Origin: Selaginella moellendorffii
Lineage: Eukaryota; Plantae; Lycopodiophyta
DNA length: 64,000 bases
NCBI RefSeq assembly: GCF_000143415.4
Contig: NW_003314276.1
Span: forward strand, 22,105 to 86,104
Reading direction: 5' to 3'
Below the pieces are notes generated by a model that was not told the origin of the DNA, did no database searches, and saw only the letters and a list, made by a program, of their open reading frames with translations. Each line of letters begins with the position of its first letter. The stretch's first letter is position 1. Positions 6,824 to 57,995 of this stretch are shown in pieces. The translations under genes were made by a program, and so were the position numbers.

Positions 6824-7386
6824 GCATCGTGTTTATTCCTGATGTTTTAGTAATTTCAAAGAGTTGTAATTGTAATTGTAATTTTTAACATAATCATTAT
6901 TATAGCATACATAATTTAACATAATATAATATTTATATTGAAAGTCCCTTTTACATAATTTATGCTTAATATATAAATTATTGTTATATTATAACATGCT
7001 ATATTATAATGTATATATAATTTTTGTTTTTTTAGTATCATGATTTTTATGATATTAAAATATTATAGAATAAGTTATTAATATCTTAAATCATAATTTA
7101 TAGTATAATTTGTGTAACCAGAAGCCCATGCATGCATTGTCATAAAGTGTGGAAATACAATAGATTTCCTATTCCATCTACATGATCAACAAGAAATAGA
7201 TGTGACTCACTCTTATTGTCTAATGCTAGCTTCCANNNNNNNNNNNNNNNNNNNNNNNNNNNNNNNNNNNNNNNNNNNNNNNNNNNNNNNNNNNNNNNNN
7301 NNNNNNNNNNNNNNNNNNNNNNNNNNNNNNNNNNNNNNNNNNNNNNNNNNNNNNNNNNNNNNNNNNNNNNNNNNNNNNNNNNNNNN

Positions 7387-20059: not shown

Positions 20060-21460
20060 TTGAGGGGTGAAAGCCCAAAGCGTGTGTCTCCCAAGGGGGG
20101 GTGTGGGGGCGGGATTGTAGGGGTTTCCAAAAGTATAGTGGGGATAGTGTGAGGTCTAGGAACTAGTCTTGAAAGAACTCTCCAGTGGTGCTTCCAAATT
20201 GACTTGAGGTTGAGATTGGGGTTGGGGGGCCTTGGGTGGGAGTGAGCATGGACTTGGGTGGTACACTACTTATAATTCGGTATTCTTTACTGCCATGACG
20301 GCAGGAGGTCAGTATTGCAGGACCTGTTATTAGTTCGCACTTGAGCTAGTTGAGAAACTAGTCATTGACCGTGCATTTAAATGGGATAAACAACAGGTAG
20401 GAACCCTATGTGTTTCTTGCTGAGCATACTCGGCCCGGTTTGAGAAACTCCTATCATTGGCTTGCATTTGCTAATATCAAGAACCCCCGTGATATTGAGA
20501 TTGGTCCCTCAATATTTGCTAGATGATAGCTTACTGTATCTACCAAACATCCTCGCTATCATGCCCTTTGTGTTAGTCTCATTTCAGTCCCAAATATTAT
20601 TTATAGAAAGTGTCTAAATTCGCTCATTTGGCATATCTACGGAATGTAGAGATTGTCCTAAACACAATCGTGTTCGTCCCATGTCTAAATTCGCAATGTA
20701 GCACCATTCCATNNNNNNNNNNNNNNNNNNNNNNNNNNNNNNNNNNNNNNNNNNNNNNNNNNNNNNNNNNNNNNNNNNNNNNNNNNNNNNNNNNNNNNNN
20801 NNNNNNNNNNNNCGCGAACTCTATTTGGCTTTGTTTTGCATGCTAGTCCTGGCATTGGGATGCTGGTTGCTTTAGGACTGTTCCAAGTTGCTTTGGGCTC
20901 CTATACCTTCGCTCTTTGGGCTGTATGCTTAGGAGTTGCTCTGTGGTCCGGTTTTGTCACTCTTTGGCTCCATGCTTGGGAGTTTGGCACCGTTCCTTCA
21001 TTCAGTGGCCCAAGGCCTTGAACCTTGGGTTTCACACCACTGTCCTATGGACACATGGCATATAACACATGGCAAATGGAGGGTTTAGGTTCTGCTTTGT
21101 GGTGTTTTCCTATGGTAAATCACCATAGGATAAAGGGTAAAACCCATGTGCGCTACAATGCCCCACATGAGTACTATACACGTCATTGGTCCTCACCCCT
21201 TCCTATGGGCTTCGGCCTTCCCTTCAAGATGGAATTGGGGGAGTAGGGGCACCCATATCAGGCTGTTAGGCCACGATGTTTCTCTTTGGGGTCCTGAAGC
21301 AAAGTGATGCACTGAAAGCTTGGGATTTAGAGGGTCCTATAATCAAGTTTTATTGTACTAAGGGAGTTTATGAATCTAAAGGTTTGGTGTGCTTGGCTTC
21401 TTGTGCTTGTAGGGAGTGTAGTTAAACCTTAAGTCCACTCATAACCTCCATAATTCCTAT
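20060..21460 (+). mobile_element. GypsyA-type LTR fragment interrupted by a family D LTR (about 20265-21157)
   Basis: 20060-20260 and 21158-21460 match the GypsyA LTR; the middle matches the family D LTR ending GTGCGCTACA at 21157. Confidence 0.75.
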
Positions 21461-24893: not shown

Positions 24894-26054
24894 TGTAAGG
24901 AACCGACTCCCCGAGATGTCGTAGGCTAAAGGATCCCCAAAAGCTTGACCGAAATGACAAAGAGTTCATCGGATGGGACCAAATCGAGGATCGAGTCCAA
25001 GACCGATTCTAGGACCGAGTTCGAGATAGAGTCCGGAATCGAGTCCAAGACCGACTCGGGGACCGAGTTCGAGTCTGAGTTCGACACCGAGTTCGAGACG
25101 GAGTCCGAGATCCGAAATTGGGTCCGAGACCGAGTCCGAGGTCGAGTCCGAGGTCGGGTCCGAGATCGGGTCCGAGATCGAGTCCAAGATTGAGTCCGAG
25201 ACCGAATCCGAAGTCGGATCTGAAATCGGGTCCGAGATCAAGCTAGAGACTAAGTCCAAATACTAATACGGGTCAAGGGGTGAAAGCCCAAAGCGTGCGT
25301 CTCCCGGGGGGGGGGGGGGGCTGCAGGGGGTTCCAAAAGTATAGTAGGGATAGTGAGGTCCAGGAACTAGTTTTGAAGGGACTCTCCAGTTGGGCTTCCA
25401 AACCGACTTGAGGTTGAGACTGGGACCGAGGGGCCTTGGGTGGGAGTGAGCATGGACTTGGCTGGTGCCGGAGGGGCCATCCAAGGAAGTGCTCAAGAGC
25501 AGCTCCCACTCCCGAAAGGGAAACCGACTGCGGTGCTCCCGGCTCAGGTGGAGTGGTGCCCCACTTGAGTACCTCGTGGCTCATTGGTCCTCGCCCTTCC
25601 GGGGGCTTGGGCCTTCCCTTCGGGATGGAAGAGGGGGGGTAGAGGTACCCATATCGGGCCGTTAGGCCACGGTGTTTCGCCCTGACGTCCCGAAGCAAGT
25701 GCTGCACCCAAGACTTGGGATTTAGAGGGTCCCATGATCAAGTCTTGTGGTACCAAGGGGTGTTAGGAATCTGGAGGCTTGGTGTGCTTGGCTGTTTGTG
25801 CCTGTGGGGAGTGTAGCCGAACCTTAAGTCCAGTCTAACCCGGGGAGGGGGATTGGGAGAGATTTGGGAATCCGTAGATGGATGGCTAACACTCCGTTGC
25901 TCGTGCAGTAAGTAGCTGAAACCAAGTAGGACCAAGTAGGAGCTGGTACCATAGGCGGGAACCTTGGCGAGGGAACTTAGCAAAAGCCAAGGCAGAGTTT
26001 GTCGGATAGACGAGGTAAGCTGGCAAATTGGAAAGGAAAAATTTGTGGTTTACA
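24894..26054 (+). repeat. GypsyA 5' LTR, containing a CCGAGT-type hexamer array at ~24985-25260
   Basis: TG...CA ends; duplicated at 31291-32447. Confidence 0.96.
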
Positions 26055-27314
26055 ATTTGGTATCGGAGCCTCTTCCTCAGTTCTAGCGAAGGATAGAGGC
26101 GGATTGCTGGGAGATGGCAAGGGCAGGACGTAAGCGAATCTAGGCAGAGACGGAACCCTTCTCCAGAGTTGGAGCCTCCGGTCGAACAGGAGGCTATGGA
26201 TGAGGAATCCTTGCATGAGGAGGACTCCAGTGAGGCAACTTCCAAACAGGAGTCTGGTGGTGAGGTTCGGTCGTCCAAGGCTCGATTGGATGTTCTAGAA
26301 GGACAATTGGCACAGACCAATGCCCTGCTAGAGACTCTCGTACGCAAGCTAAAGCGTGACGAGAAGCGGAAGAAAAAGCGAAAGACTGCAGATGCTGGTA
26401 GCGCAGAAGGTGCGGACCCCTCGGCAGGGACTGAGGCAAAACCAGACAAGGTCGAACAGACCAAAGTGGAATCAGTCCCTTAGGCAGTTCCCAAGTACAA
26501 ACCAAAGCCCCCACCGGTCTTCAAGGGAGTGAACGACTATAAGGTGGTGGAGGATTGGTTTTACGATATGGAGGACTACTTCCGAGCGTTGCGATTACCG
26601 AGCTCGGAGAAGGTCCCATGTGCAAAACCATACTTGGCAGATAATGCCAAGTCTTGGTGGAGAACGACAGAGGCCAACGAAGGACCAGTGGCCACTTGGG
26701 AAATGATGAAGGCGAGGATCCGCGCAACTTACGTTCCTCCGAATGCTACTCTGCATCTAAGGGACGAGCTGAGTAGGCTGAAGCAGACCGGAACCATTCA
26801 GGAGTATGTGAATGGGTATATGGCAAAGAGGATACTTGTCACGGACATGGGGGATATGGATGCGTTCCATGCCTTCATATCAGGTTTGCAAACCTGGGCT
26901 CGCGGTGAAGTAATGCGGTGGAACCCGACCAACTACAAGGAAGCGTTGGATGCAGCCATCAAGGTGCATTTCAACGATAACCTGCGAAAGGGGAACGCGA
27001 CGGGGTCGGGATCCATGTTTAGCAAAGGGGCCAAACCAAGGGGAACGTTTAGCAGAGGGAAATTCAAGAAGAGTTTCTCTAAGAATGAGTCCTCGGGGTT
27101 CCGGAAAGGCAGATCTGGTGGCCAGCGAGCGAGTACGTGGGGGAGTCAAGTGAAAAGAGACAAACCCATGGATAAGAAGGTCAAGTCGTATAGCAGCGTG
27201 GGAAACAACGTATGCTACAACTGCGGCGAAGCTAAACACTTCTCGAGGGAATGTCCCTACCCGAAGAAGGCCAGAGCCAATATGGCCATCAAGTCGGGTG
27301 AAGTCCAAACAGAG

Positions 27315-27369
27315 GTATGTAATCCAGTCCCTAACTCAAAGTTACTCATTACACGAGCAACTTTGGTAG
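27315..27369 (+). other. Candidate 55-nt intron between Gag and protease (GypsyA)
   Basis: GAG|GTATGT donor, CCCTAAC branch-like motif, TTTGGTAG acceptor; removal gives RVVRDIY*. Confidence 0.6.
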
Positions 27370-29988
27370 AGAGTTGTTCGTGACATCTACTAGCCCTCCG
27401 AGGGAAGCTCAGAGGTAGCTTTGTTAAAATCCTTATTGACACGGGTGCTTCGGATAATTTTGTGGCTGCAGACATAGTCCGGCAAGCCGGACTAACAGTG
27501 CAGCGGCTAGGCGAACCAAGGACTATAGAGTTTGTTCAAGGTAGCCAAAGCACCGATGAGGTACTTCGACAAGCGAGAGTCGAAGTGGGGACTTGGAAGG
27601 TGGACATGGATTTCACCGTGTTGGACATGGCGGGATTTGACGTGATCTTCGAAATGGACTGGTTCAATCGATTTGTGGTAGCCCTGCATGGACAAGGTAG
27701 AAACCTTGTGGTACTGGCGAATGCCCAAGGAAGAAGATCTAGGGTGGAGGCCCAAGATCTAAAGGTAGGGCAAAGCAAGGCCAAAGATTCCTGCTTAAAT
27801 CTGGTGTCCACGAGAGGACAACTCACTAAAGGAACTAAGGCGGCCTTTTTGTGCTTACTCTCGGTGAAGAGTGACAAAAAGACAGGAACGGAAGAAGTAC
27901 CTTTAGTGATCCAGCGGGTGTTAGACCAATTCCAGGATACCATGCCAGAGGAGCTACCGGCGGGGCTACCCCCAGCACGACGGATAGAACATAAGATTGA
28001 GCTCGTCAAGGGTGCTGAGGCAGTGGTTCGTCCCCCTTATCGTTTGAACGAAAAAGAACTCAAGGAGCTCAAGTGCCAACTAGAGGAGTTGGTGGACAAA
28101 GGGTATGTTAGGTTGAGCAAGTCGCCGTATGGGGCGCCGGTGTTATTTGTGAAAAAGAAAGATGGATCTATGTGTATGTGCATAGACTACTGGTTGCTCA
28201 ACAAGTATACAAAGAAGAACAAGTACCCTTTGCCAAGGATTGAGGACCTGTTCGATAGGTTGGGAAAGGCAAAATACTTCTCGAGGATTGACCTAAGGTC
28301 AGGATACTACCAGATTAGGGTAGCCGAGGAAGATGTCGAGAAGACAACCTGTCAAACGAGGTATGGGAGCTTTGAGTTTCTGGTGATGCCCTTCGGGCTA
28401 TGCAATGCGCCGGCAACGTTTTCGGCGCTAATGAACCACATCTTTGTACCCTATCTGGATCACTTCGTGGTCGTCTATATCGACGACATCCTGATCTATA
28501 GTGAGACGCTAGAGGAGCATGCCGAACACTTGGCGAAGGTGTTTGAGAAACTAAGGGAACACAAACTGTATGCTAAAGAGAGCAAATGTGACTTTGCTCA
28601 ATAAGAGGTAAAGTTTCTCGGGCATGTGGTGGGCCAGGACGGGCTCAAGGTGGACCCGGAGAAGGTCCAAGCGATCCAGGAATGGGAGCGACCATCCAAT
28701 GTACACGAGTTGAGGGCATTCCTGGGGCTATGCAACTACTATCGAAAGTTTATCAGACACTATTCGAGAGTAGCCCTGCCCTTAACGGACCAAACAGGAA
28801 AAGGGGAGATGGTGTGGACAGCGGAATGCGAGGTGGCATTCGTCCACCTCAAAGGGAAGTTGAGGAAGGCTCCCGTATTGGCATTACCAGACTTTGGTAA
28901 GGACTTTGAGGTAGAAATGGATGCTTTGGACTTTGCGTTGGGCGCAGTTTTGAAGCAAGACAACCATCCGGTAGCGTTCTTCTCAAAGAAGCTGGACAAG
29001 GCTCAACGGAAGTGGCCTGCCCACGAGAAGGAATTGTTTGCGGTGGTCAAGGTGTTCAAGGAGTGGCGACACTACCTTGGGAGACACTTCAAGGTTTACA
29101 CGGACAATGTGGCAACGAAGCACTTCTTGTCACAGCCCGACCTAAGAGGGAAACAAGGTCGGTGGGCCAATGCCTTGGCTGAGTTTGATTGCGAGATTCT
29201 GTACAAGCCTGGGAAGAGCAACATCGTGGCGGATGCGCTAAGTCGAAAAGCGAGCTTGAGGTTGGCAATATCCAGCGCAACAGCAACCTTTTGGGACGAT
29301 GTGCGGACAGCATATGAGAACGATGGTTTAGCACAAGAAGTGTTGCTAAAGAATCTAGAGGCACGAGAAGCTCACCAGAGAGGTGAGCTGCCAACGGAAG
29401 AGAAAACGGGCTATGCGGAACGCAACGGACTCATCTATTACAAGCAAACGAGGGTGTATGTTCCAGAAGGGGAACTAAGGAAGGTGGCCTTAGAAGAGTG
29501 TCATGACGGACCTCTTGCGGGACACGGCGGAGTGCCCAAGACGATGGGCTTACTCAAAAGGAAGTACCATTGGCCAGATATGGCTAAGGACGTCCAAGAC
29601 TATTTAAAGACATGTCCAACATGTCAGCAGGTAAAAGCCGTGACTAAGGCTAGTGGGGGCTTGTTGCAAAGCATCCCAATTCCAGATCGCCCGTGGAAAT
29701 GTCTTACGATGGACTTCATCACGGGACTCCCTCCAAGCGAGGGGTTTGATGTGATATTCGTGGTGGTGGACCGATTTTCGAAAATGGCACATTTCATACC
29801 CACCACAACAGAGGTGGATGTGGAAGGTGTGGCGAAGCTATTTTTCGAACAAGTGGTTCGAGTGCGGGGAAGACCACAAGAGATCATCTCAGATCGAGAT
29901 AAGATCTTCACCAGTAGGTTCTGGAGGACTCTCCTAGAACAGTATCGCACCAAGTTGAAATTCAGCACAGCCTATCACCCACAGACAG

Positions 29989-30034
29989 GTATGGGGTATT
30001 AAGTCAAGTTGTTGGTACTAACACTTCTTGACAG
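29989..30034 (+). other. 46-nt spliceosomal intron in the integrase core (GypsyA)
   Basis: CAG|GTATGG...TACTAAC...TTCTTGACAG|AC; removal exactly restores [16 protein letters not shown]. Confidence 0.9.
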
Positions 30035-30452
30035 ACGGACAAATGGAAAGGGTGAATAGGCAGCTGGAGGATTATTTGCGATGCTATGTCTCGGAAGACC
30101 AGACCGATTGGGTAAGTCATTTGGGACTTGCGGAAATGTGTTATAACAACTCACCACATTCGAGTATCGGGGTGAGTCCATGGGAAGTCATCAATGGGCG
30201 AGCTATTGAAGGTCCTGTGGAACTTGGCATGGCCGAGTATCATGGAGAGTTGCCCGCAGTGGAGGCATTCACGGTGGAAAGACTCAGCATTTGGAATCTA
30301 GTGAGGGATTCCTTGGAACGGGCTCAACAAAGGCAAACCAAATACGCGAACCAGAAGCGTCGGGATGTAGAGTTCCAAGCTGGGGAGAAGGTGTGGCTGA
30401 ACACCAAGAACCTCAGACTACCAAGTGGGATCAGCCGAAAGTTGACCCAAAG

Positions 30453-30504
30453 GTAAAGATGCATGTACTCCTGTGAATGAATTGATCTTGAGTTCCTTAA
30501 GCAG
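30453..30504 (+). other. 52-nt spliceosomal intron just before the integrase GPY motif (GypsyA)
   Basis: AAG|GTAAAG...TTCCTTAAGCAG|G; removal exactly restores RKLTQ-R-FAGPYEI. Confidence 0.88.
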
Positions 30505-30990
30505 GTTCGCGGGGCCTTACGAGATTGAGGCACGAATCGGTAAAGTGGCTTACCGACTCCAACTTCCTCAAGAGATGGGGAAGGTGCACCCAGTGTTCCA
30601 CGTGAACTTACTCAAGCCGTACTTTGAGGATCTGCTTCGCAAGGACCAAGTGAGACCTTTACCTGAGGTTATCCAAGGGGAAGAGGAATACGAAGTCGAG
30701 GCCATCCTCAATGCGCGCAAGAGCAAGCGACAAGGACGCGAGGTGAGAGAGTTCCATGTGAAGTGGAAAGGATTTCCACACTGCGAAGCAACATGGGAAC
30801 CGGAGGAGAACCTAGCGAACGCGCGAGATCTAGTGGAGGAATTTCTGCAAGGCAGAACTCTATGTACTTATGCAAAATTCAATTAAAAATATCAATTTGC
30901 AAAGTTGAGCAAGTGGCATATGTTGGGACCTGAAGGCGCGCCGAAGGTAAGCTAATTAGCATGGGTTGGATAGGTCAACCAGGCGTAGGG

Positions 30991-31224
30991 CACTACGCCC
31001 GACTCCCCGCGGGGATGTCGAATCCGTAGACGTATTCTACGGAGGTTGGGTTCGAGTCCCAACCCCCCTAGTAAAGCAAGGCTGGGTTCAAGTCCCGACC
31101 CCATACTAGGGCGTGGTGAGGTTAGGGGTATAGGGACACCTATATTCCGTTGTCATGGGCTCTTGGCCGGGGAGGCTAACTTAGGCACACCGCTAAATGG
31201 GGGGATGCCCCTGGAGACATGGTC
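30991..31224 (+). ncRNA. Predicted structured cis-RNA in the GypsyA 3' UTR with two T-loop hairpins
   Basis: Multiple stems with compensatory changes relative to 43300-43513; see findings. Confidence 0.7.
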
Positions 31225-31290
31225 AACAAGTCGTAGGATAAAACGAGACGTTCGATGTGGGCATCGAACTTCTTCTATGGGTGGTGGAGT

Positions 31291-32447
31291 TGTAAGGAAC
31301 CGACTCCCCGAGATGTCGTAGGCTAAAGGATCCCCAAAAGCTTGACCGAAATGACAAAGAGTTCATCGGATGGGACCAAGTCGAGGATCAAGTCCAAGAC
31401 CGATTCTAGGACCGAGTTCGAGATAGAGTCCGGAATCAAGTCCAAGACCGACTCGGGGACCGAGTTCGAGTCCGAGTTCGACACCGAGTTCGAGACGGAG
31501 TCCGAGATCCAAAATCAGGTCCGAGACCGAGTCCGAGGTCGAGTCCGAGGTCGGGTCCGAGATCGGGTCCGAGATGAGTCCGAGATNNNNNNNNNNNNNN
31601 NNNNNNNNNNNNNNNNNNNNNNNNNNNNNNNNNNNNNNNNNNNNNNNNNNNNNNNNNNNNNNNNNNNNNNNNNNNNNNNNNNNNNNNNNNNNNNNNNNCC
31701 CAGGGGGGGGGGGATGCAGGGGGTTCCAAAAGTATAGTAGGGATAGTGAGGTCCAGGAACTAGTTTTGAAGGGACTCTCCAGTTGGGCTTCCAAACCGAC
31801 TTGAGGTTGAGACTGGGACCGAGGGGCCTTGGGTGAGAGTGAGCATGGACTTGGCTGGTGCCGGAGGGGCCATCCAAGGAAGTGCTCAAGAGCAGCTCCC
31901 ACTCCCGAAAGGGAAACCGACTGCGGTGCTCCCGGCTCAGGTGGAGTGGTGCCCCACTTGAGTACCTCGTGGCTCATTGGTCCTCGCCCTTCTGGGGGCT
32001 TGGGCCTTCCCTTCGGGATGGAAGAGGGGGGGTAGAGGTACCCATACCGGGCCGTTAGGCCATGGTGTTTCGCCCTGACGTCCCGAAGCAAGTGCTGCAC
32101 CCAAGACTTGGGATTTAGAGGGTCCCATGATCAAGTCTTGTGGTACCAAGGGGTGTTAGGAATCTGGAGGCTTGGTGTGCTTGGCTGTTTGTGCCTGCGG
32201 GGAGTGTAGCCTAACCTTAAGTCCAGTCTAACCCGGGGAGGGGGATTGGGAGAGATTTGGGAATCCGTAGATGGATGGCTAACACTCCGTTGCTCGTGCA
32301 GTAAGTAGCTGAAACCAAGTAGGACCAAGTAGGAGCTGGTACCATAGGCGGGAACCTTGGCGAGGGAACTTAGCACAAGCCAAGGCAGAGTTGGTTGGAT
32401 AGACGAGGTAAGCTAGCAAATTGGAAAGGAAAAATTTGTGGTTTACA
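31291..32447 (+). repeat. GypsyA 3' LTR (contains an N gap)
   Basis: Copy of 24894-26054. Confidence 0.96.
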
Positions 32448-39345: not shown

Positions 39346-39577
39346 TGTGAGACACAAAATCCCTAGGCCCCAAAGTGGAGTTGGAAAGGGTGCCACGTGG
39401 TAGTGGCCGAAACGAAAGCCAAACGAGCGTAACACATTTGGACTAAAAGCTTTGACTTGGAAGGTCGAGAGCGGGAGTGGAACTCCTAACAAAGTGCTCG
39501 AGGAACAAGCACGAAGCGAGCAATAAGTGAGACTCCAAAAAGGGACCCAAAAGGACCAACACATGACACGTGGAAGT

Positions 39578-40146
39578 GTCCGAGATGGAGTCCGAGATGG
39601 AGTCCGAGGTGGAGTCCAAGGTGGAGTCCGAGATGGAGTTTTAGATGGACCCGAGTTGGAGTCCGAGATGGAGTCCGAGGTGGAGTCCGAGGTGGAGTTC
39701 GAGATAGAGTCCGAGATGGAGTCCGAGGTGGAGTCCGAGGTGGAGTCCGAGGTGGAGTCCGAGATGGAGTCCAAGATGGAGTCCGAAGTGGAGTCCGAGA
39801 TGGAGTCCGAAGTGGAGTCCAAGATGGAGTCCAAAGTGGAGTCTGAGATGGACCGAGACGGAGTCCGAGATGGAGTCCGAGATGGAGTCCGAGACGGATT
39901 CCGAGATGGAGTTCGAGATGGACCGAGATGGAGTCCGAGATGGACCTGAGATGGAGTCCGAGGTCGAGACCAAGACCGGGACCGAGACCGGGACCACGAC
40001 CGGGACCGAGACCGAGACCGAGACCGGGACCGGGACCGAGACTGAGACCGAGGCGGAGGCCGAGACCGAGCCCGAGCCCGAGTCGGAGTCGGAGTCCGAG
40101 TCCGAGTCTGAGTCCGAGTCCGAGTCCGAGTCCGAGTCCGAGTCTA
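39578..40146. repeat. Hexamer-based minisatellite (GAGTCC/GAGATG/GAGACC) within the family C LTR
   Basis: Seen directly; also at 50638-51195 and 51700-52035. Confidence 0.95.
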
Positions 40147-43100
40147 AGAGGGTGAAAGCCCAAAGCGTTTGTCTCCCAGACCCTGGGGGGTTGGGTGAGC
40201 TCCAAAAGTATAGTAAGGGGGAGGACTACAGTGGAGCCAGTTTGGCCAGGAAAGGCCAGTTTGGCCCAGGAAGGCCAGACCCAGTGTTGGGTGATGAACT
40301 GACCATTGGGAAGTCCAAGACTAGAGTGAATACGGACCGACAAGCGGGGTAGCTTGGTGAAGTGTTCAAGAGCCACCTCTAGTTCCCCCGGGAGATCGAC
40401 TGGCCGATGCTCCCAGTCCAAGTGTGGGTGGCACTACCTACTTGGATACTAGGCGTGGCTCAACGGAACCTTGCTCTAAGCCCATGGCTAAAGCACACAA
40501 AGGCGGAAGGCGGGGAGAGTACTCAGGTGGCTCGCGTAAGGCCACGGTGTTCCGAAGTGTTGTCCCCAAGTCCCAGACTGTGGAAAGGAAAAGGAGCAGT
40601 CCTTTGGTGTGGTGGCCAAGGATACGGTCATGTGGTGAGGAAGTCCCAGAGGACCATGGGACTTAGTGGTCAGGCCTGTGGGCCCCAATCCAGTGGCAGT
40701 GTTGGCAAATACGGCCAAGGGCAAAAAGGGATTTAGTGGGGACTGACAGAGGGATATTGGGGAAGGCTATTCCCCTTGTCAGTGGGCATCCTAAGGATGC
40801 TAAGGAGTGGATCTGGGAGGACCACTCACGGATGGTTGGCCCAGTCTTGGAGAGATGGGATTGTGATGCAAGTGGTATTGGACCACTAGTGCAGCAAAGG
40901 TGAATGGGCATGGCCTTAGCGTAACGGGCTGATATGTTAGTGGTACCTTTGGGTGCGATGTGGTGGATAGAAAAGGGGCCAGTAAGGGAACGACTTTGGG
41001 ATTTTAGGAACAGTATAAGGGTTTCCTCAGAGAGTTGAGAATGTGATCCAGATGAGCATTTGACTTAGCAAACTGGCTGATGTAGTTGTGGTAAACAACT
41101 ACAGTTGGGATCATGGGAAAGATGCAGACTCCAAAATAATAAAGGAGTCACAAGATAATCCGCATATAGTTGAGGCTGGTGCTCATGAATTTGAGACCAG
41201 AATTGATGACCATGAGAGGTCAAGTACAGATGAGGGCAAGAGCCCTCGAAATGGTAGCTGGGGCTACTTTTTATAATGCTGGAACGAACCCAAGGAGTTG
41301 GGGGTGTGCTCAAAGAATGAGTCAGCATTCTCATCATGGGGACGGATAGTCCTAAGGGGCAAAAGGCAGCCCACAGAGAACGGGAAATAATGAAGTGTTG
41401 GAGTAACACTTGCAAGATGGTCCTTATAAGTAGGACATGAATACATGAAGTTGTATTTGAGTGAGCTGGCACCTCAAAAATAAGACCTTATGGGTCATTG
41501 GTTTAGCAAAGTCCAAAAATGCTGGATGACTCAAGTGGGGTCAAGGAATGGTCCTAAGGGATTGGTTGAAGCATTTAGACTGAGGTGTATGCTACCCCAT
41601 GAGGTATGGGGAGGATCATAAGATCCAAGTATGAGAACAGGAGATATCTCATTGATGGTAGAATGTGCCATACTAAAGTTGTGGGAAAGATGTTCCTAGA
41701 AGAAAGCAACTTTGGCCCAGAGTTGGGGACAAATATTATGGTGCGGTGCTAACGGATAGTTAGCATGAGGCATAACTATATTGGTCTTGGCAAAGATGTA
41801 GACACTAATAAGTAGTGTCATAAGGATAGGCTCGTGGGGCCGATGGTGTGGAGACACCAAATGTGCCAAGGTGTGATACCTTGAGGTTATGATGGTGGGT
41901 TCATAAGAACCCCTTGCCAAGGGAATCCCAACGGAAGCGGGAAAGGCATGGCCTAAGCTGGAAGGCATGCGGTTGGAGTGTGGTGACCCAGATAATGATG
42001 GTGTTGTGGAAGCACCAAGCAATGAGTTGTAGGACTTGACAGCTATGGGGCAACTAAGCAAGAGGTGCAAGATAATTGGTTAAATGGGTAAAAGGTAGCT
42101 ACCCAAGACTTCTTAATGGTATAAGGAAGTTAGATATACCCTTACGGGGGATAAATTGTTTATGTTGCGATATAGTAAGTCAATGTCGTAAACGGGAATG
42201 CTCATTGTCCGGAGGCCATCATTGGGACACCCAAACACTCTAGAACACTAGGAGGTGGTGTTTCGTGTCGCAAGGGCAACAGATAAGGCCCAAGGGACTA
42301 AGTCCCTAACGAATGATGGATAGAAGGTGCTATCCAAATGTCCAATGTTGTTGAGACAAAAGAAGACTGTCTACCCGAATTGGACAAAGCCAAAAATGGA
42401 ATTTTGGCAAGGCTAGTGATGGGCATGTAAAAGCCCATAAGCAGCAACGTTAACCCCGGTATGTGGGATTATAAGGTGAGCATGCCCAAGATTGAGGAAC
42501 CACTCCCTAGGCTATTGGGTAGGTTCATCCCTAAGCATACTTGCTAAGGCATAGTAAAATGTGCAAAGCTATCCTCCTAGTTTGGAGGAGAATAACCAAA
42601 GGAAACATATGGGGCCAAAAGGCAAGTAATATTGGGATGCAACTAAACTATAGAAATTGAAGGGCATATCTAATGGTGGTTATGCAAGTTGGGAGTGGAG
42701 AATCAAGAGGGTGCTTGAGGATGTTGTTGCTAGCAACTGTGAGGCCATGGAGAGTCTAAAATATGGAATTGTCTGTGTTAGACTATGTGGCAACTATAAA
42801 GCTTGCGAAAAGGAAGGCCTTAGCAAGCTAAGGGACAAAGTTCCTTCAAGGTTCCCAAAGATGATTCTAGGTAGCTTAGTACCTAGAAAGGCCAAAGGTA
42901 AATGGTTCATGGAACGCACGAAATCAGAGTGGCGCAGCAGAAGTGTGGTCTTGAATCTTGCCATGAGGCAAGGCTATCAAGGTTAGGGAAGTAGTTCCCG
43001 AGTGTTCAAAGAGAGGGCTTTGAATGAAAGTCCATGGTCAAGGACTTTCACACTTATGCAGGAACCATGTTACAGTGGTCGGAGGACTTGCCAAACGAGA

Positions 43101-43299
43101 TTGGCAAGTCAAGGGAACGAATACCCTAGTTGAAGGTGATTACTTCAAAAAGGGTGGGCCATGGGGCCAAGCATGGAGGAGTCCATGCATGATCACAGAC
43201 TTGTCAAGTGAGAGGATTTGGCAGTGTGGAGGAACTAGGTTCCTAAGCTGTGATCTGTAGCGTGCTTTAAGTATAAGTTGGTGCACCGGTGTGATGAGT

Positions 43300-43513
43300 C
43301 ACGCCAGGCATCCTGGGTGATGCCGTCCGTAGATGCATATACGGAGGTTGGGTTCGAGTCCCAACCCTCTAGTGCTTGGGTTCGAGTCCCAAATCACTAG
43401 GGCGTGCTGATGGTTTGGAATATGAGGACACTCATATTTCGGTGGTCATGGACTCTCAATGAGGAGATTGGCTTGGGCACACTGCCAAGCAGGGGATGCC
43501 CCGGAGTCGTGAT
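43300..43513 (+). ncRNA. Second copy of the structured 3'-UTR RNA motif (family C element)
   Basis: Same hairpin order and loops as 30991-31224, with different stem sequences. Confidence 0.7.
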
Positions 43514-44519
43514 GCACGGTTAGATTGCTTAGAGTGAAAACTCGGCATATCTAACTTGAACACTTTGGTGCAAAGGGCACCGAGGACGTGGTGAATGAGA
43601 TGGGGACACCCAAGTCTCAATTGCTATGGATCCTTGACTAGAGTGAATACGGACCGACAAGCGGGGTAGCTTGGTGAAGTGTTCAAGAGCCGCCTCTAGT
43701 TCCCCTGGGAGATCGACTGGCCGATGCTCCCAGTCCAAGTGTGGGTGGCACTACCTGCTTGGATACCAGGCGTGGCTCAATGGAACCTCGCTCTAAGCCC
43801 ATGGCTAGAGCACCCAAAGGCGGAAGGTGGGGAGAGTACCTAGGTGGCTCGCGTAAGGCCACGGTGTTCCGAAGTGTTGTCCCGAAGTCCCAGACTGTGG
43901 AAAGTTAAAGGAGTAGTCCTTTGGTTTTGTGGCCAAGGATACGGTCATGTGGTGAGGAAGTCCTAGAGGACCATGGGACTTAGTGGTCAGGCCTGTGGGC
44001 CCCAATCCAGTGGCAGTGTTGGCAAATACGGCCAAGGGCAAAAAGGGACTTAGTGGGGACTGACAGAGGGATATTGAGGAAGGCTGTTCCCCTTGTTGGT
44101 GGGCATCCTAAGGATGCTAAGGAGTGGATCTGGGATGACCACTCACGGATGGTTGGCCCAGTCTTGGAGAGATGGGATTGTGATGGAAGTGGTATTAGAC
44201 CACTAGTGCGGCAAAGGTGAATGGGCATGGCCTTAGCGTAACGGGCTGATATGTTAGTGGTACCTTTGGGTGTCGGTCTTGGGACCGGACACGTGGAGCA
44301 CTTGGACTAAGTGCAAGGGATGAATGGCATAGATGCCATCCTCGGGGCTAGCAAGTCCCAAGTCCTGAATTGGACTTAAGGAGGTTGTGAATAAGACTCC
44401 TCCAAGTGGTCAAAGGTGTGGTTAAGTGACTAAAGTAGAATGGAAAAATTAGTCGCTTACACATCCTTAGCCAAGGCGGAAGGCCACCAAGACCAAGTCA
44501 GGATCAGTGGAAGCTCACT

Positions 44520-46585: not shown

Positions 46586-48248
46586 ACTCCCGCTTGCGTG
46601 CCTGTCTTTGTTCTGCGTCCGGCTTGGGTCTAAGCCCAAGCTCCAGACCATACTAGTTGGTGGAGTACTCATATCCTCACGTTAGGCCACTGGTATGCCA
46701 AAATTGTGCCAAACTCCGTCTAACACCATTTTGTGTGCAGGTGCTGGATATGGGGAGCTGGTGCTCATGGGATTGTACCGGACCCTTGTTTCGTAGCGCA
46801 ATGGGCTTGGAGTTCGGCTCCAAATTTAGGTGCGCTACATTTGGTATTAGAGGATTGTCTTAGTGATTCCTATCCAACTTTTGTCGGATTTTTTGACTCA
46901 AGTTGCATACACAGAGACTTTTCTAGTAGATCCAAAGTGACCTATGTAGGATTAGTTGGATTGCACCATTTGATAAGAATGTTGTAAGCATGTTTAGTTA
47001 TTGATAAAGACAAGCGTGCAGCTAGTGGGATGGTGAATAGGAACCGTGTTGATGATGCTGAAACCTCTAGATAGGCAAATCAAGAGGAGGAAACTCTTGT
47101 TAGAGATGCTGCGGAAGAGGCTGAGGCCAAGTTAGAAGAGGATGAGCCAGATGTTGCGGCATTGCAGCTTACGGCTCAGGAAGTGGAGATCAAGAATTTG
47201 CGAAGGGAGATTCGCAAATTGAAGAAGGAGAACAAGAAGAGGAAGAAAAAAACTGAGGTAGCTAAACCAACTAAGCCTAAGCAACTGGACTCCTCCTCAA
47301 GTTCTGAGGACGATGAACTTCTGCAGCCACCCTCAGTTGCACGAGTTTCAAAGTTCAAGCCTCTGAAACCACCCTATTTCAGAGGCATGCGGAACTATCA
47401 GGTTTTGGAAGACTAGGTCAATGATATGGAAAATTATTTCATAGTGGCAGACGTAGATGATCGTATGAAAGTTGCATGTGCACAATCCTTTCTCACCGAT
47501 CATGCCAAAACTTGGTGGCGCCAGGTGTGTGTTAAAAAAGGGCAGACTAGAAGTTGGACCAAGATCGGTCTCGTATCCGTAAAGAATATTTGCCGGATGA
47601 TCTTGGTCTGAGACTTCGCACAGAGCTGCGATGGTTAAAGCAATGAGGGGACCTTATGGATTACGTTAATGCGTTTGCTCAGAAGCGCATTATGATTGCA
47701 AATATGAGTGACGAAGATGCTCGAAGTTATTTTCTAGAGGGTTCAAGTTCATTTTCTCGCAATGAGATTTTGAAGTTTAAGCCAAAGACATACCTGGAGT
47801 GTAAGGAGGCAGTGCGCAAGTTGCCTTTAGTCACTTGCTCATGGAACAATATTAGCAACCTTATGCTGGTAACTCGAATAAGAATAGAAATTCTGGGAAT
47901 AAGCAAGGTGATCGGAAACAAAGGGTGGAACGTAGGTACCGCCCTAGGGGCTCACAAGCTATGGTTAATAAAGGTGGTGGTGGTTGGAGACCACCAGCAG
48001 CTTCTTCTGGTCCTATGCCCTCTATTCCTCCTCCTGGTGGGTACAAGCAGCAGCAACTTGCAAAACCTGCTCCTAGTGAAACGGGTAGTGTGGGTCATTG
48101 CTTCCATTGTGGAGAGTCAGGACATAGGTCCTCGGAATGTCCCAACAAGCATAAGACAAGGTTTCGTGTTAATGTCATGAGGGAAGACAGTGGTGGTGAA
48201 GCCGAAGGGGTTGACAAGTTGGTCAATGCAGACTATGAGGAAGAAGAG

Positions 48249-48288
48249 GTGAGTAACTTTCATTGCTTTGCTCAAGCTTTTCTTGCAG
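48249..48288 (+). other. Candidate 40-nt intron between Gag and protease (GypsyB)
   Basis: GAG|GTGAGT donor and TTTTCTTGCAG acceptor; removal gives SMQTLIR*. Confidence 0.65.
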
Positions 48289-50406
48289 TCAATGCAAACA
48301 CTGATCCGTTGATGTATCTGGTAGGCTTTATCCGTGGATACCGAATCCGAGTGATGATTGACACTGGAGCTATGCACAGTGTGATATCCGAAGACTTAGT
48401 TAAGTTGTTAGGATTAAATGCTGAGGAAATGTCGCCTAAGCACTTCTGGTTTGCGGAAGGTGGGCAAGTAGCCAGAAAGTTTGTGAGTGATGTTCCAATA
48501 AAGATATCCAAGTGGAAAGAAAGAGTGGACTTGGTAGTGTTGAAGATACTAGATTTTCAAATGGTATTTGGTATGGACTTCTTCAACAAATATATAAAAG
48601 GGATTTATGGTGTTGGACAAAGTTGTATCACATTGAAATTAGAAGGATATCCCTATGTATCCTTCCAGTTGCAAAACTATTCCTCAAAGGATTGGGATGC
48701 AAAGTTCCTGACTGCGAGGGCCACTCAAAAAGAAACTAAGAGGGGATGTCAGACCTTTTGGGTTCAAGTGATGGAAGCTAAGGGTGTGGGTGACTCCGTT
48801 CAAAATCGTGACGGAGTTGATGCTGTACCAACGAAGATATTGGAGTTGTTGCCGCAGAATCAGGACATCTTTCTGAAGGATTTACCACCAGGGCTACCTC
48901 CTAGCCGTGAGGTTGATCATTGGATTGAGGTTATTCCGGGTTCTAAACCACCTACAAAGGCTCCGTATCGATTGAACATCAAGGAGATGGCTGAACTCAA
49001 GAAGCAACTCACGGAGCTTCTTGACAAAGGTCATATCCGACCAAGCAAGTCACCTTATGGAGCGCCAGTCCTTTTTGTTATAAAAAAGGATGGAACCATA
49101 AGGATGTGTATTGACTATCAGGCACTCAACAAGATCACGGTTAAAAATAGTTATCCTGATGACTTGTTTGACCAACTCTTAAAGGCTAAGTGTTTTACGC
49201 GACTTGATTTGCGGTCCGGGTATCATCAGATACAGGTGGTAGATCAGGATGTGGAGAAGATAGCCTTTATGACTCAATATGGATCTTATGAGTTCTTTGT
49301 CATGCTGTTTGTGTTATGCAATGCTCCAGCAATGTTCAACACTATGATGGATAGAATATTTGGAGATTATTTGGACGCATTTGTTGTCCTATATATCGAC
49401 GATGTTCTAGTCTTTAGTGAAACGTTGGAGGATCATTGGAACACTTGGATTTAGTGTTTCAGAAGTTGCGCAAACACAAACTGTATGTTAAGGAAAGTAA
49501 ATGCAGTTTTGGTCAATTGCGTATAAACTTTCTCGGACATATAGTTGGTGGTGGCGTGATTGAGGTCGATCCAAAGAAGGTGGAAGTGGTGAAGTCCTGG
49601 GAAGTTCCGACCACTGTATCAGATGTTCATTCCTTTCTTGGTTTGGCAGGATACTATCACAAGTTTGTCCGCAATTTTGCAAGAATTGCTCTTCCGTTGA
49701 CTGAATTGACGAAGAGTAGTATTCCGTTTCATTGGACACCAGCTTGTCAGCGTGCTTTTGTATGGTTAAAGGAGATCTTGACTACAGTTCTTGTTCTCAG
49801 GATTCCAAATCTTGATAAACGCTTCGAAGTGCATTGTGATGCATCTGGCTATGCTATCGAGCTTCACTTCTCAGTTTGGGATAGGCTTATATTCTATAAG
49901 CAAGAAAGATTGTATGTTCCCTCTAAGGATCTACAATAGTTATTTCTGTGGGAGCATCATGATGTTCCAGCAGTGGGACATGGTGGGAAGCGAAAGACTC
50001 TAGCTTCATTGAAAAAGGGATTTTTCTAGTCTGGTATGGAAGGTGATGTAGCGGATTATGTCTGTTCCTGCCCTATATGCCAGCAATGTAAGTGCAGAAC
50101 TGAGAAGCAGGCTGGAAAGTTGCAGTGCATTCCAGCACCGGCATGGCCATTTCAAAGTGTGACACTTGATTTTGTCACTTCTTTGCCAAAGTCTAAGGGT
50201 TATGATACTTTGATGGTGGTTGTGGATTGGTTGTCAAAGATTGCACACTTCATTTCAATTGTGGGAACAATAAATGCGAAACAAGGAGCAAAGCTCTTTT
50301 TCCATGAAGTAGTGCGAGTTCGTGGTCTTCCTGAAGAAATGATGTTAGATAGAGATTTGAGGTTTACAGGGAAGTTTTGGGGGACCCTATTCCAGTTGTT
50401 TGGTAT

Positions 50407-52262
50407 TGTGAGACACAAAATCCCTAAGCCCCAAAGTGGAGCCGGAAGGGCGCCACATGGTAGTGGCCGAAGCGAAAGCCAAACGAGCGTAACACGTTTG
50501 GACTAAAAGCTCCAACTTGAAAGGTCGAGAGCGGGAGTGGAACTCCCAACAAAGTGCTCAAGGAAGAAGCACGAAGCAAGCAATAAGCAAGGCTCCAAAA
50601 AGGGACCCAAAAGGACCAACACATGACACGTGGAAGTGTCCAAGATGGAGTCCGAGATGGAGTCCGAGATGGAGTCCAAGATTTACCCGAGTTGGAGTCC
50701 GAGGTGGAGTCCGAGATGGAGTCCGAGATGGACCGAGATGGAGTCCGAGATGGACCCGAGTTGGAGTCTGAGGTGGAGTCCAAGATGGAGTCTGAGATGG
50801 ATCGAGATGGAGTCCGAGATGGAGTCCGAGATGGACCCGAGTTGGAGTCCGAGGTGGAGTCCGAGATGGAGTTCGAGATGGACCGAGACGGAGTCCAAAA
50901 TGGAGTCCGAAGTGGAGTCCGAGTTGGAGTCCGAGATGGCGTTCGAGATGGACCAAGACGGAGTCCGAGATGGAGTCCGAGATGGACTGAGACGGAGTCC
51001 GAGATGGAGTCCAAGATGGGCCAAGATAGAGTCCGAGGTTGAGACCGAGACCGGGACCGAGACCGAGACCGAGACTGAGATCAGGACCGAGACTGAGACC
51101 GAGGCCGAGGCCGAGACTGAGCCTGAGCCCGAGTCTTTGTCCAAGTCCCAGTCCGAGTTCGAGTCCCAATCCCAGTCTGAGTCCAAGTTCGAGTTTGAGA
51201 GGGTGAAAGCCCAAAGCGTTCATCTCCCAGACCCTGGGGGGTTTGGTGAGCTCCAAAAGTATAGTGGGGGGAGGACTGCGGTGGAGCCAGTTTGGCCAGA
51301 AAAGGCCTGTTTGGCCCTGGAAGGCTATACCTAGTGTTGGGTGATGAGCTGCCCACTGGGAAGTCCAAGGCTAGAGTGAACACGGACTGACAAGTGGGGT
51401 AGCTTGGTGAAGTGTTCAAGAGGCGGCTCTAGTTCCCCCGGGAGATCGACTGGCCGATGCTCCCAGTCCAAGTGTGGGTCGCACTACCTACTTGGATACT
51501 AGGCGTGGCTCAATGGAACCTCACTCTAAGCCCATGGCTAGAGCACCTAAATGCGGAAGGTGGGGAGAGAACCCATGGTGTTCCGAAATGTTGTCCCGGA
51601 GTCCCAAACTGGGGAAAGGAGGAGGAGCAGTCCTCTAGTGTAGTGACTAACGATACGGTCACATGGTGAGGAAGTCCCAGAGGACAATGGGACTTAGTGG
51701 CCGGACCCGAGTTGGAGTCCGAGGTGGAGTCCGAGATGGACCCGAGTTGGAGTCCGAGGTGGAGTCTGAGATGGAGTCCGAGATGGACCGAGATAGAGTC
51801 CAACATGGAGTCCAAGATAGACCCGAGTTGGAGTCCGAGGTGGAGTCCGAGATGGAGTCCGAGATGGACCGAGATGGAGTCTGAGATGGAGTCTGAGATG
51901 GACTAAGACGGAGTCCGAGATGGAGTCCGAGATGGACCGAGATGGAGTCCGAGAAGGATCCGAGATGGAGTCCGAGGTCGAGACCGAGACCGGGACCGAG
52001 ACCGGGACCGAGATCGAGACCGAGGCTGAGATCAGGACCAACGGGCCGAACTGTCAGTGGTACCTTTGGGTGTCAGTCATGGGACCAGACACGTGGAGCA
52101 CTTGGACCAAGTGCAACGGTTGAGTTGCACGGATGCCATTCTTGGGGCTAGGAAGTCCCCAAGTCCGGAATAGGACTTATGGAGGTTGTGAGTGAGACTC
52201 CTCCAAGCGGTCGGAGGTGTGGTGAAGTGACTAAAGTAGAATGGAAAAATTAGTCGCTTACA
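50407..52262 (+). mobile_element. Family C solo LTR inserted in GypsyB integrase
   Basis: TGTGAGAC...CGCTTACA with TSD GGTAT/GGTAC; the flanks rejoin as [21 protein letters not shown]. Confidence 0.93.
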
Positions 52263-57487: not shown

Positions 57488-57995
57488 TGTAAGCAACCAA
57501 AAAGAACAACTCAAGAAACAATCCATAGAGTTCAAATATAAACGGAAAGGGCCTCTGAATAAGAGTGCACCCCCTTTTCCAATTGGTTAAGGGTCTTGGG
57601 ATACTTGGGGTTAAGTGTCTTTAGGTTTGAATAGTACTGGGTTGGGTGACCTCTCGGGAAGTCCAAACTTAGGAGCTTACATTTGGTATCAAAGCGGTCT
57701 CAGGTCCAACTCTGTTGATTTGCTAGGGGAATCACACCATATGTTGATTGACATCTGGCTGGTCCAATTTGCTCCTGCTAGGCTCGACCCGAGGGGTAGG
57801 GTGTCAAGAGAGCAGGGCTCTTGGGAGAGCTGCGGCCCTCAGTTTCCGTTCACGAGGGCATGAACTTGCAGGGAAGCGTGGTAGATTGTAAGCAACCAAA
57901 GGGAACAATTCGAGAGACAATCCATAGGGTTCAAATATAGAGGGAAAGGGCCCATGAATAAGAATGCACCCCCTTTTCCAATCGGTTAAGGGTCT
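57488..57995 (+). mobile_element. Cassandra-type TRIM with a 5S rRNA-derived segment in the LTR; 3' LTR truncated
   Basis: 194-bp LTR TGTAAGC...GCTTACA (57488-57681), PBS TGGTATCAAAGC at 57684-57695, ~205-bp non-coding core, purine tract, and a second LTR from 57887. 57609-57664 (GGTTAAGTGT...TAGTACTGGGTTGGGTGACCTCTCGGGAAGTCC) resembles the 5S internal control region. Confidence 0.88.

What the first reader, a model, noticed from the sequence alone, without database searches (positions are those of the whole stretch)
30991..31224. Covarying multi-hairpin RNA with two tRNA-like T-loops in the GypsyA 3' UTR
Seen by comparing with 43300-43513 (GypsyA first, family C second). Closing stem: CACTACGCCC/GGGCGTGGTG vs CACGCC/GGCGTG. 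It encloses four arms: CGAC..GTCG vs GGCATC/GATGCC; TCCGTA/TACGGA in both; GGTTGGG-TTCGAGT-CCCAACC in both; and CTAGTA/TACTAG vs CTAGTG/CACTAG carrying a second GGG-TTC(A/G)AGT-CCC loop. Next is GGGGTATAGG-GACA-CCTATATTCC vs GGAATATGAG-GACA-CTCATATTTC. Last is a cloverleaf-like domain: TTGGCC/GGCTAA vs TCAAT/ATTGG, TTAG-GCACACCG-CTAA vs GCTTGG-GCACACTG-CCAAGC, and GGGG-ATG-CCCC in both. Loops are conserved while stems change in compensating pairs. Known: GGTTCGANTCC is the tRNA T-arm / Pol III B-box, and simple retroviruses use structured 3' elements (CTE) to export unspliced RNA. Inference: an undescribed cis-acting RNA for packaging, dimerisation or export.
Basis: partly seen in the sequence, partly recalled or inferred. 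Interest (0 to 1): 0.82.

Follow-up and report, generated by a model that had tools for sequence, protein, structure and literature searches.

The report
Conserved folded RNA before retrotransposon LTR
Two distantly related retrotransposon copies share a stretch of about 235 bases just before the 3' LTR that folds into the same three-domain RNA shape, including two tRNA-style T-arm hairpins, and keeps it through compensating base changes; it matches no catalogued RNA family, but only two copies could be examined and its job is inferred, not shown.

Summary
Window 30991-31227 (GypsyA) and 43300-43517 (family C) are homologous at about 72% identity. Each folds on its own into the same architecture: a five-way junction with four arms, two of them T-arm look-alikes; a hairpin with a GACA loop; and a four-way junction.

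Of 76 comparable base pairs, 26 differ between the copies and 20 still pair, 11 through changes on both sides. A permutation null gives 57 pairs kept against 70 observed (0 of 20000). Twelve G.U pairs and no A.C mismatch place the structure on the sense strand. Family C has stops in all frames here.

The module is the best conserved piece between the two 3' regions. It lies between the pol stop and the G-rich tract before the 3' LTR.

Rfam, ARAGORN and the literature searches gave no match. It is not a tRNA, a SINE or a complete Pol III unit.

No further copy was found. The nearest pol relatives in the libraries are at most 50% identical and lack it, as does a second chromovirus in the window.

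My reading is a lineage-specific cis-acting RNA module of the genomic transcript. A role in particle assembly or reverse transcription is favoured over export or stability, but this is inference only.

The parts
24894..26054 (+). GypsyA 5' LTR (TG..CA)
   Evidence: Self-BLAST pair with 31291-32447, 97-98.5% identical. Ends read. Flanks CCTAT / CCTGT.
26058..26069 (+). Primer-binding-site-like 12-mer, 3 nt after the 5' LTR
   Evidence: Assignment to the initiator-Met tRNA type is from my own knowledge and was not tested.
26529..30886 (+). GypsyA gag-pol (gag, zinc knuckle, protease, RT, RNase H, integrase, SH3_Tf2-1, chromodomain). It is broken by two internal in-frame stops and two frameshifts.
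   Evidence: Pfam scans of the pieces. Count of stops and frame changes.
30991..31227 (+). RNA module, copy A (whole)
30991..31118 (+). Copy A domain 1: closing stem (30991-30999 with 31110-31118) around four arms
   Evidence: MFE and constrained fold
31000..31020 (+). Copy A arm P2. The stem covaries with C; 3 pairs changed on both sides.
31023..31043 (+). Copy A arm P3. The stem is conserved; the loop differs but has a self-complementary core in both copies.
31044..31064 (+). Copy A T-arm look-alike 1: 7-bp stem and 7-nt loop UUCGAGU, identical in C
31068..31109 (+). Copy A arm P5, carrying T-arm look-alike 2 at 31080-31100 (loop UUCAAGU)
31125..31148 (+). Copy A hairpin P6: 10 bp, GACA loop. 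Two pairs changed on both sides and three G.U to A-U.
31149..31227 (+). Copy A domain 3: long outer stem around three hairpins (loops include GCACACCG and GAUG)
   Evidence: The middle hairpin costs 0.9 kcal/mol over the MFE alternative.
31250..31269 (+). Further 8-bp hairpin between the module and the G-rich tract; not conserved in sequence in C
   Evidence: Read
31279..31290 (+). G-rich tract directly before the 3' LTR (polypurine-tract position)
   Evidence: Read. Function inferred from position.
31291..32447 (+). GypsyA 3' LTR (contains an assembly gap)
43300..43517 (+). RNA module, copy C (whole)
43346..43366 (+). Copy C T-arm look-alike 1
43369..43400 (+). Copy C arm P5 with T-arm look-alike 2 (43376-43392, loop UUCGAGU)
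43416..43441 (+). Copy C hairpin P6: 11 bp, GACA loop
43442..43517 (+). Copy C domain 3
43636..44461 (+). Last 826 bp of a family-C LTR (ends ..TTACA), 118 nt downstream of copy C
39346..40955 (+). First roughly 1.6 kb of the long form of the family-C LTR. It overlaps the previous part over 637 bp at 95.8% identity.

Best explanation
The stretch is a lineage-specific structured module of the retrotransposon's full-length sense transcript. It has three domains and about 235 nt, and sits in the 3' untranslated region just upstream of the plus-strand priming tract and the 3' LTR. It acts in cis at the RNA stage.

Shown: the fold, its conservation by compensating changes, its strand, its non-coding nature and its position.

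Inferred: it is a recognition platform used during the element's own replication cycle. I favour capture of the genomic RNA by the element's Gag/nucleocapsid or RT-integrase during particle assembly and the start of reverse transcription. In this view the two T-arm look-alikes engage a surface, or a host factor, that normally handles the primer tRNA. This would be a shape-based counterpart of the way Ty3 uses 3'-end sequences together with its 5' primer site.

I put about 0.8 on 'selected sense-strand RNA structure' and about 0.3 on this particular role. The confidence figure given is for the package.
For: - Same architecture from two independent single-sequence folds.
- Of 26 pairs that differ, 20 stay paired, 11 by double changes. 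Permutation null: 57.2 +/- 1.8 against 70 observed.
- 12 G.U cells and no A.C cell. The antisense folds are 12.5 and 14.8 kcal/mol weaker, and A's antisense fold loses the architecture.
- Copy C has stops in all frames.
- Between the 3' parts of A and C, homology is confined to the module (E 8e-28) plus weak LTR patches at 65-74%. The island's ends coincide with the ends of the fold.
- The C copy keeps the module although the 2.3 kb upstream of it has no detectable coding capacity.
- Both copies sit 60-120 nt upstream of an LTR start.
- Ty3, the type member of this superfamily, needs 3'-end sequences that engage the T and D arms of the primer tRNA, and its RNA packaging depends on UTR or POL sequences (PMC5371799, PMC4974528).
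Against: - Only two copies, both from one window, and the counts rest on an alignment fitted to the model.
- No evidence of transcription was available.
- Packaging signals of retroelements are usually in the 5' leader (own knowledge).
- The T-arms are in the tRNA sense, so they mimic a tRNA T-arm rather than pair with one, unlike the Ty3 3' site. They also lie upstream of the LTR, not inside U3.
- The one base of a primer T-stem that the primer-site 12-mer would imply does not fit either T-arm. This is weak and rests on own reasoning.
- A second chromovirus in the window (B) and all relatives fetched lack the module, so it is not a general requirement.
- Loop-to-leader complementarity is at chance level.
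- Family C's history is unclear (see the notebook), so 'kept by a non-coding partner' is not secure.
Confidence: 0.4

Rival explanations
1. It is an export or stability element of the unspliced full-length RNA. It would resemble the transport elements that sit between the last gene and the 3' LTR of some simple retroviruses and murine LTR retroelements, or elements that shield a long 3' UTR from decay.
For: - Same position, between the pol stop and the 3' LTR.
- Multi-hairpin, sense-strand, compensated structure.
- Retained in a copy without coding capacity, as the MusD/ETn pair shares its 3' element (own knowledge).
- The 3' UTR plus U3 is long enough to be a plausible decay target (own knowledge).
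Against: - No similarity to any catalogued element.
- T-arm look-alikes are not a feature of the known transport elements.
- tRNA export receptors need free tRNA ends (own knowledge).
- No intron is evident that would make export a problem.
- The function is not testable here.
Confidence: 0.2
2. It is a DNA-level signal. The two B-box-like motifs would bind TFIIIC as an insulator or targeting mark, or drive a small Pol III transcript from inside the element.
For: The motif GTTCRANTCC occurs twice per copy. The window holds 6 against 1.0 expected, and 4 of them lie in the two modules. Retroviruses with Pol III-driven small RNAs in their 3' part are known (title and abstract of PMC12498455, seen).
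Against: - Conservation extends over 235 nt and follows base pairing, with double changes and strand-specific G.U pairs. A protein-binding DNA box does not predict this.
- No tRNA-type gene by ARAGORN or Rfam.
- No run of four or more T on the sense strand in either copy up to the LTR (read).
Confidence: 0.06
3. It is a relic: a piece of tRNA- or SINE-derived sequence picked up once and passed between elements by recombination, with no present function.
For: The two T-arm look-alikes have the tRNA consensus loop. LTR elements do acquire small-RNA-derived sequence (Helenus, Cassandra: PMC10886601). Only two copies are known.
Against: - No tRNA or SINE model matches even at E up to 10.
- The arms next to the T-arms are not D- or anticodon-like.
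- Neutral decay would break stems, yet 70 of 76 pairs are kept against 57 expected.
- The module is better conserved than the LTRs around it.
Confidence: 0.1
4. It is a chance resemblance, or an artefact of folding G+C-rich repeats.
For: Energy z-scores are moderate for A (-2.76). The antisense of C also folds well, z -4.44.
Against:: every control is exceeded by a wide margin.
Confidence: 0.01

Closest known systems
3' RNA transport elements of retroviruses and LTR retroelements (CTE of simian type-D retroviruses, RTE of IAP, MTE of MusD/ETn). Named from my own knowledge; no sequences were used.
   Same: They lie between the last reading frame and the 3' LTR, are multi-hairpin and act in cis on the full-length RNA. 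The MusD/ETn case is shared by an autonomous element and a non-coding partner.
   Different: No sequence or structure match was returned by Rfam. T-arm look-alikes are unknown in those elements. The host here appears to be a plant-type genome. The binding partners that define those families could not be tested.
3' half of the bipartite primer-binding site of yeast Ty3 (PMC5371799, PMC4974528)
   Same: Same superfamily (Ty3/gypsy). A 3'-end RNA segment connected with the T arm of the primer tRNA, bridging the genome ends.
   Different: The Ty3 site is complementary to the tRNA arms and lies in U3, downstream of the plus-strand priming tract. Here the hairpins are in the tRNA sense, so they are mimics, and lie upstream of the LTR within a 235-nt fold.
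tRNA T-arm and tRNA-like structures (viral 3' TLS, MALAT1 mascRNA type)
   Same: Two hairpins with a G-C closing pair and the loop UUCRAGU. In domain 1 a closing stem encloses several arms.
   Different: Four arms, none of them D- or anticodon-like. No tRNA call. The module is internal to the transcript and not at its 3' end.
Helenus / Cassandra type TRIMs with small-RNA-derived sequence (PMC10886601)
   Same: LTR retroelements that carry tRNA- or 5S-like sequence.
   Different: There the small-RNA-like part lies inside the LTR and is read as a Pol III promoter. Here it lies in the internal 3' region of a coding element, and the constraint is on RNA pairing.
Interdigitated double T-loop modules (T-box stem I, RNase P, ribosomal L1 stalk). 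Own knowledge.
   Same: Two T-loops close together in one folded domain.
   Different: The known modules are built from internal or distal loops with other sequences. Whether these two hairpin loops pack against each other cannot be told from sequence.

Membership tests
tRNA gene, pseudogene or tRNA-derived SINE head | Cloverleaf recognised by tRNA finders or the Rfam tRNA model | tested here: not met
   ARAGORN found 0 genes in the window. No tRNA hit at gathering score or at E up to 10 over either copy.
tRNA gene, pseudogene or tRNA-derived SINE head | T-arm: G-C closing pair and 7-nt loop of the type quoted in the finding | tested here: met
   Two per copy
Pol III type-2 transcription unit | Terminator: a run of T shortly downstream on the sense strand | tested here: not met
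   No run of four or more T from the module to the LTR in either copy (read)
Pol III type-2 transcription unit | A box at the proper distance upstream of the B box | not tested
Any Rfam 15 family (including viral TLS, 3' translation enhancers, ribozymes, retroelement elements) | Covariance-model match | tested here: not met
   0 hits at gathering score over the window. Only noise at E 1.7-6.6 over the two copies.
Retroelement 3' transport elements (CTE / RTE / MTE) | Position between the last ORF and the 3' LTR, acting on the sense RNA | tested here: met
Retroelement 3' transport elements (CTE / RTE / MTE) | Binding of the cognate export factor and rescue of RNA export | not testable with these tools
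   No tool available
Ty3-type 3' primer-binding segment | Located in U3 and complementary to the T and D arms of the primer tRNA | tested here: not met
   The module ends 64 nt before the LTR start. The T-arms read in the tRNA sense. Complementarity to the actual primer tRNA could not be checked because no tool supplied its sequence.
Helenus / TRIMp3 | tRNA-like sequence inside the LTR of a short non-coding element | tested here: not met
   The module is internal, upstream of the LTR, and copy A belongs to a 7.5-kb coding element
Chromovirus (chromodomain-bearing Ty3/gypsy), for the host element | gag, PR, RT, RNase H and IN in that order, with a C-terminal chromodomain | tested here: met
   Pfam: Retrotrans_gag, zf-CCHC, RVP_2, RVT_1, RT_RNaseH, Integrase_H2C2, rve, SH3_Tf2-1, Chromo at E 1.4e-16

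The most novel reading that the evidence does not exclude
The two T-loop hairpins of domain 1 pack against each other into a double T-loop platform that docks the elbow of the primer tRNA, or of another tRNA, by shape. T-box leaders, RNase P and the ribosomal L1 stalk dock tRNA in this way. The 3' end of the genomic RNA would then hold the primer tRNA without base pairing and bring it near the 5' primer site.
Probability: 0.07. Interest if true: 0.85.

Novelty: new variant of a known kind. Interest (0 to 1): 0.55.

Why it matters
Cis-acting RNA signals of plant-type LTR retrotransposons are almost unknown beyond the primer site and the polypurine tract. These elements nevertheless make up most of many large genomes.

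A defined, compensated, 235-nt three-domain fold with two T-arm mimics would be a concrete object for several questions:
- how such elements pick out their own RNA;
- how non-coding derivatives hitch a ride;
- whether tRNA mimicry links genome recognition to primer handling.

It would also give a sequence-and-structure marker for one chromovirus lineage. At present it rests on two copies.

Tried and rejected
1. Metagenome scan with a loose double T-loop pattern. None of the 120 metagenome loci of that scan, nor the 23 viral loci of the same pattern, is homologous. They are phage or bacterial tRNA arrays.

2. An exact 24-mer around T-arm 1 gave 0 hits in viral and in bacterial/archaeal contigs.

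3. Protein route to relatives. Word searches with the chromodomain piece and the RNase H-integrase piece reached at best 47-50% identity, and so did the exhaustive representative search. Contigs of six relatives were fetched, and contaminant or viral contigs were added. None carries the module by BLAST or by covariance model.

4. A word search with the spurious 91-aa ORF that overlies the module, in the hope of mis-called ORFs in relatives, found nothing.

5. The full-window model search with filters off failed internally. It was run only over element B's 3' region.

6. Long-range pairing between module loops and the 5' leader or LTR is at chance level: 7-mers at the expected number for A, and one 9-mer in C with about 0.5 expected.

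7. The idea that the 12-nt tandem repeats in U3 are B-box arrays was rejected. There is only one motif match per array.

8. Protein-coding conservation was rejected.

9. Host genes that might identify the organism: none of eight long ORFs outside the elements has a Pfam match.

Full report
WHAT IS THERE

They align at 72% identity over about 210-230 nt.

Folded separately, each gives the same plan.
- Domain 1: a closing stem around four arms. These are P2, P3, a 7-bp hairpin with the loop UUCGAGU (identical in both copies), and a longer arm P5 that ends in a second hairpin with the loop UUCAAGU or UUCGAGU.
- A 10-11-bp hairpin with a GACA loop.
- Domain 3: a long outer stem around three small hairpins, with loops including GCACACYG and GAUG.
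- In A, the middle hairpin of domain 3 is 0.9 kcal/mol above the MFE alternative.

CONTEXT

Copy A lies in a 7.5-kb LTR retrotransposon.
- The LTRs are 24894-26054 and 31291-32447, 97-98.5% identical, with TG..CA ends and flanks CCTAT/CCTGT.
- A primer-site-like 12-mer starts 3 nt after the 5' LTR.
- The internal region reads gag, zinc knuckle, protease, RT, RNase H, integrase, SH3_Tf2-1 and a chromodomain. It is therefore a chromovirus-type Ty3/gypsy element.
- Its gag-pol (26529-30886) is broken by two internal in-frame stops and two frameshifts.
- The module starts 105 nt after the end of pol and ends 64 nt before the 3' LTR. A further hairpin and a G-rich tract lie in between.

Copy C ends 118 nt before 43636. 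From there to 44461 runs the last 826 bp of a family-C LTR. The stretch just before 43636 aligns with A's pre-LTR stretch.

The 2.3 kb upstream of copy C shows no similarity to A's or B's proteins and no Pfam match.

Family C's layout is odd. A 5' LTR fragment of a longer LTR form lies at 39346-40955 and overlaps the 3' fragment over 637 bp at 95.8% identity. I cannot tell whether this is one old deleted insertion, two subfamilies side by side, or a misassembly (notebook, 'unexplained').

IS IT MORE THAN CHANCE?

- Energy z-scores are -2.76 (A) and -4.20 (C).
- The two MFE structures share 61 of 80 pairs at the same alignment columns. Shuffles of C share 0.4 on average and 10 at most.
- A covariance model built from A alone with A's structure finds C end to end at 114.8 bits and nothing else in the window.
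- On the resulting alignment, 81 pairs give 96% paired cells, 11 pairs changed on both sides and 9 changed on one side with pairing kept. With partners slid by 1-3 columns there are 0-2 double changes and 40-47% pairing.
- I reshuffled C's substitutions among paired positions with the same base in A. The null keeps 57.2 +/- 1.8 of 76 pairs (maximum 65). The observed number is 70, reached in 0 of 20000 permutations.
- Caveats: two sequences only, and the alignment is fitted to the model. The plain MAFFT/RNAalifold run still gives 57 pairs, 6 of them with double changes.

WHICH MOLECULE AND WHICH STRAND?

- There are 12 G.U cells and no A.C cell. On the opposite strand those 12 would be mismatches.
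- The antisense folds are 12.5 (A) and 14.8 (C) kcal/mol weaker, and A's antisense fold does not keep the plan.
- Copy C has stops in all six frames across the module, so the constraint is not on a protein.
- Between the 3' parts of A and C, detectable homology is limited to the module (E 8e-28) and two weak LTR patches at 65% and 74%. The island's ends are the ends of the fold.
- The constraint therefore follows RNA-type pairing on the sense strand. That is the strand of the element's full-length transcript.

RELATIVES AND KNOWN FAMILIES

- Rfam 15 gives nothing at gathering score over the whole window. At E up to 10 over either copy it gives only noise, and no tRNA, viral tRNA-like structure, translation enhancer or ribozyme.
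- ARAGORN finds no tRNA.
- Four literature searches returned no description of such an element.
- A's pol has no relative above 50% identity in either protein library. The best named chromodomain hits are from Glomeromycota fungi, with assorted plants further down the list. I could not place the host organism.
- The fetched loci of relatives lack the module. So does the second chromovirus in the window, element B at 43-49% amino-acid identity.
- The module is therefore specific to a narrow lineage, and a larger alignment could not be made here.

WHAT IT IS NOT

- It is not a tRNA gene or a SINE head: no model match, and the arms next to the T-arms are neither D- nor anticodon-like.
- It is not a complete Pol III unit: there is no T-run terminator before the LTR in either copy.
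- It is not a Ty3-type 3' primer site: it lies upstream of the LTR, and the T-arms are in the tRNA sense.
- It is not a Helenus-type LTR insert (PMC10886601).
- The B-box-like 10-mer occurs six times in the window against 1.0 expected, four of them in the two modules. The U3 tandem repeats of both LTR families contain it only once each, so they are not B-box arrays.

HOW IT MOST LIKELY WORKS

Shown: a sense-strand, non-coding, compensated three-domain fold placed just upstream of the plus-strand priming tract. It is kept in a coding element and in a copy without coding capacity.

Inferred: it works in cis on the genomic transcript. I favour a role as a recognition platform in particle assembly or the start of reverse transcription. 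In that view the T-arm mimics engage a surface or factor that handles the primer tRNA. Two points from the literature bear on this:
- Ty3 needs 3'-end sequences that engage the primer's T and D arms (PMC5371799).
- Ty3 RNA packaging depends on UTR or POL sequences (PMC4974528).

Against this reading, packaging signals are usually 5', the arms mimic a tRNA arm rather than pair with one, and element B does without the module.

The main rival is an export or stability element of the kind found at this position in some retroviruses and murine LTR elements. The position fits equally well, but nothing else can be tested here.

A weak hint of a dimerisation contact is that the P3 loop holds a self-complementary core in both copies, with different letters (ACGU in A, AUGCAU in C). 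I estimate a few per cent by chance.

A DNA-level TFIIIC or Pol III reading does not predict the pairing pattern. A functionless relic does not predict 70 of 76 pairs kept.

NOVELTY

The general kind is known: a cis-acting structured element in the 3' internal region of an LTR retroelement. This fold, its two T-arm mimics and its occurrence in a chromovirus of a plant-type genome are not described in Rfam or in the papers searched. I rate it a new variant of a known kind with moderate interest, held down by n = 2.

LIMITS, STEPS LEFT OUT AND SLIPS

- The comparison with the primer tRNA was left out because no tool supplied that tRNA.
- The A-box test was left out for the same kind of reason.
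- Two covariance models of the 246-nt non-coding module were built for searching.
- Slip: the pattern was the window's own 12-mer, with one position made degenerate from my recollection of the usual primer site. In my reasoning I also recalled a few short consensus motifs from memory. Apart from that one letter, none of them was used in a tool.
- Possible slip: my notebook gives the bounds of the solo LTR nested in element B. That is the bound of a neighbouring element, but it also marks where B is interrupted.
- The direct functional test lies outside what this report may propose.

Noticed in passing
window 47387-53066 and 50407-52262: A second chromovirus-type element (B, + strand, 43-49% amino-acid identity to GypsyA) carries a nested solo LTR of family C (TG..CA, flanks GGTAT/GGTAC). 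B's 3' untranslated region has no copy of the RNA module. B's other breaks were not counted.
   Followed up: partly
window 24989-25257, 31374-31586, 39578-40142, 50638-51133: The U3 parts of the GypsyA LTRs and of the long family-C LTR hold arrays of 12-nt tandem repeats that are about 70% alike between the two families. The short LTR form next to copy C lacks them.
   Followed up: partly
window 39346-44461: Family C layout: a 5' fragment of a long LTR, 2.7 kb without coding similarity ending in the RNA module, then a 3' fragment of the LTR. The two fragments overlap over 637 bp at 95.8% identity. It could be one deleted insertion, two subfamilies or a misassembly; this is undecided.
   Followed up: partly
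window 31030-31033 and 43333-43338: The apical loop of arm P3 has a self-complementary core in both copies but with different letters (ACGU / AUGCAU). This is a possible kissing-loop site, and the evidence is weak.
   Followed up: no
window 31250-31269: An extra 8-bp hairpin lies between the module and the G-rich tract before the 3' LTR. C has a different small hairpin at the corresponding place.
   Followed up: no
window 57684-57695: A second primer-site-like 12-mer (one mismatch to the pattern) lies inside another LTR-bounded repeat (direct repeats about 53.9-55.7 kb and 59.6-61.6 kb).
   Followed up: no
window 2081-2274, 3161-3260, 7236-7386, 20713-20812, 31587-31698: Runs of N (assembly gaps). 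The last lies inside GypsyA's 3' LTR, so this is a draft assembly and repeat-rich parts may be misjoined.
   Followed up: no
L123 (IMG/VR contig), L121, L100: Contigs picked up by the loose double T-loop pattern are phage or bacterial tRNA arrays. L123 has 36 tRNA genes plus tmRNA calls in 10.7 kb. A second T-arm-like hairpin follows some tRNAs within 10-40 nt.
   Followed up: no
L155-L165 (GTDB genome contigs): Short contigs filed under bacterial or archaeal genomes and MAGs (for example Senegalimassilia, Bradyrhizobium, Methanosphaera, Phytoplasma) encode Ty3/gypsy pol at 32-57% identity to GypsyA. They are most likely eukaryotic contamination of those assemblies.
   Followed up: no
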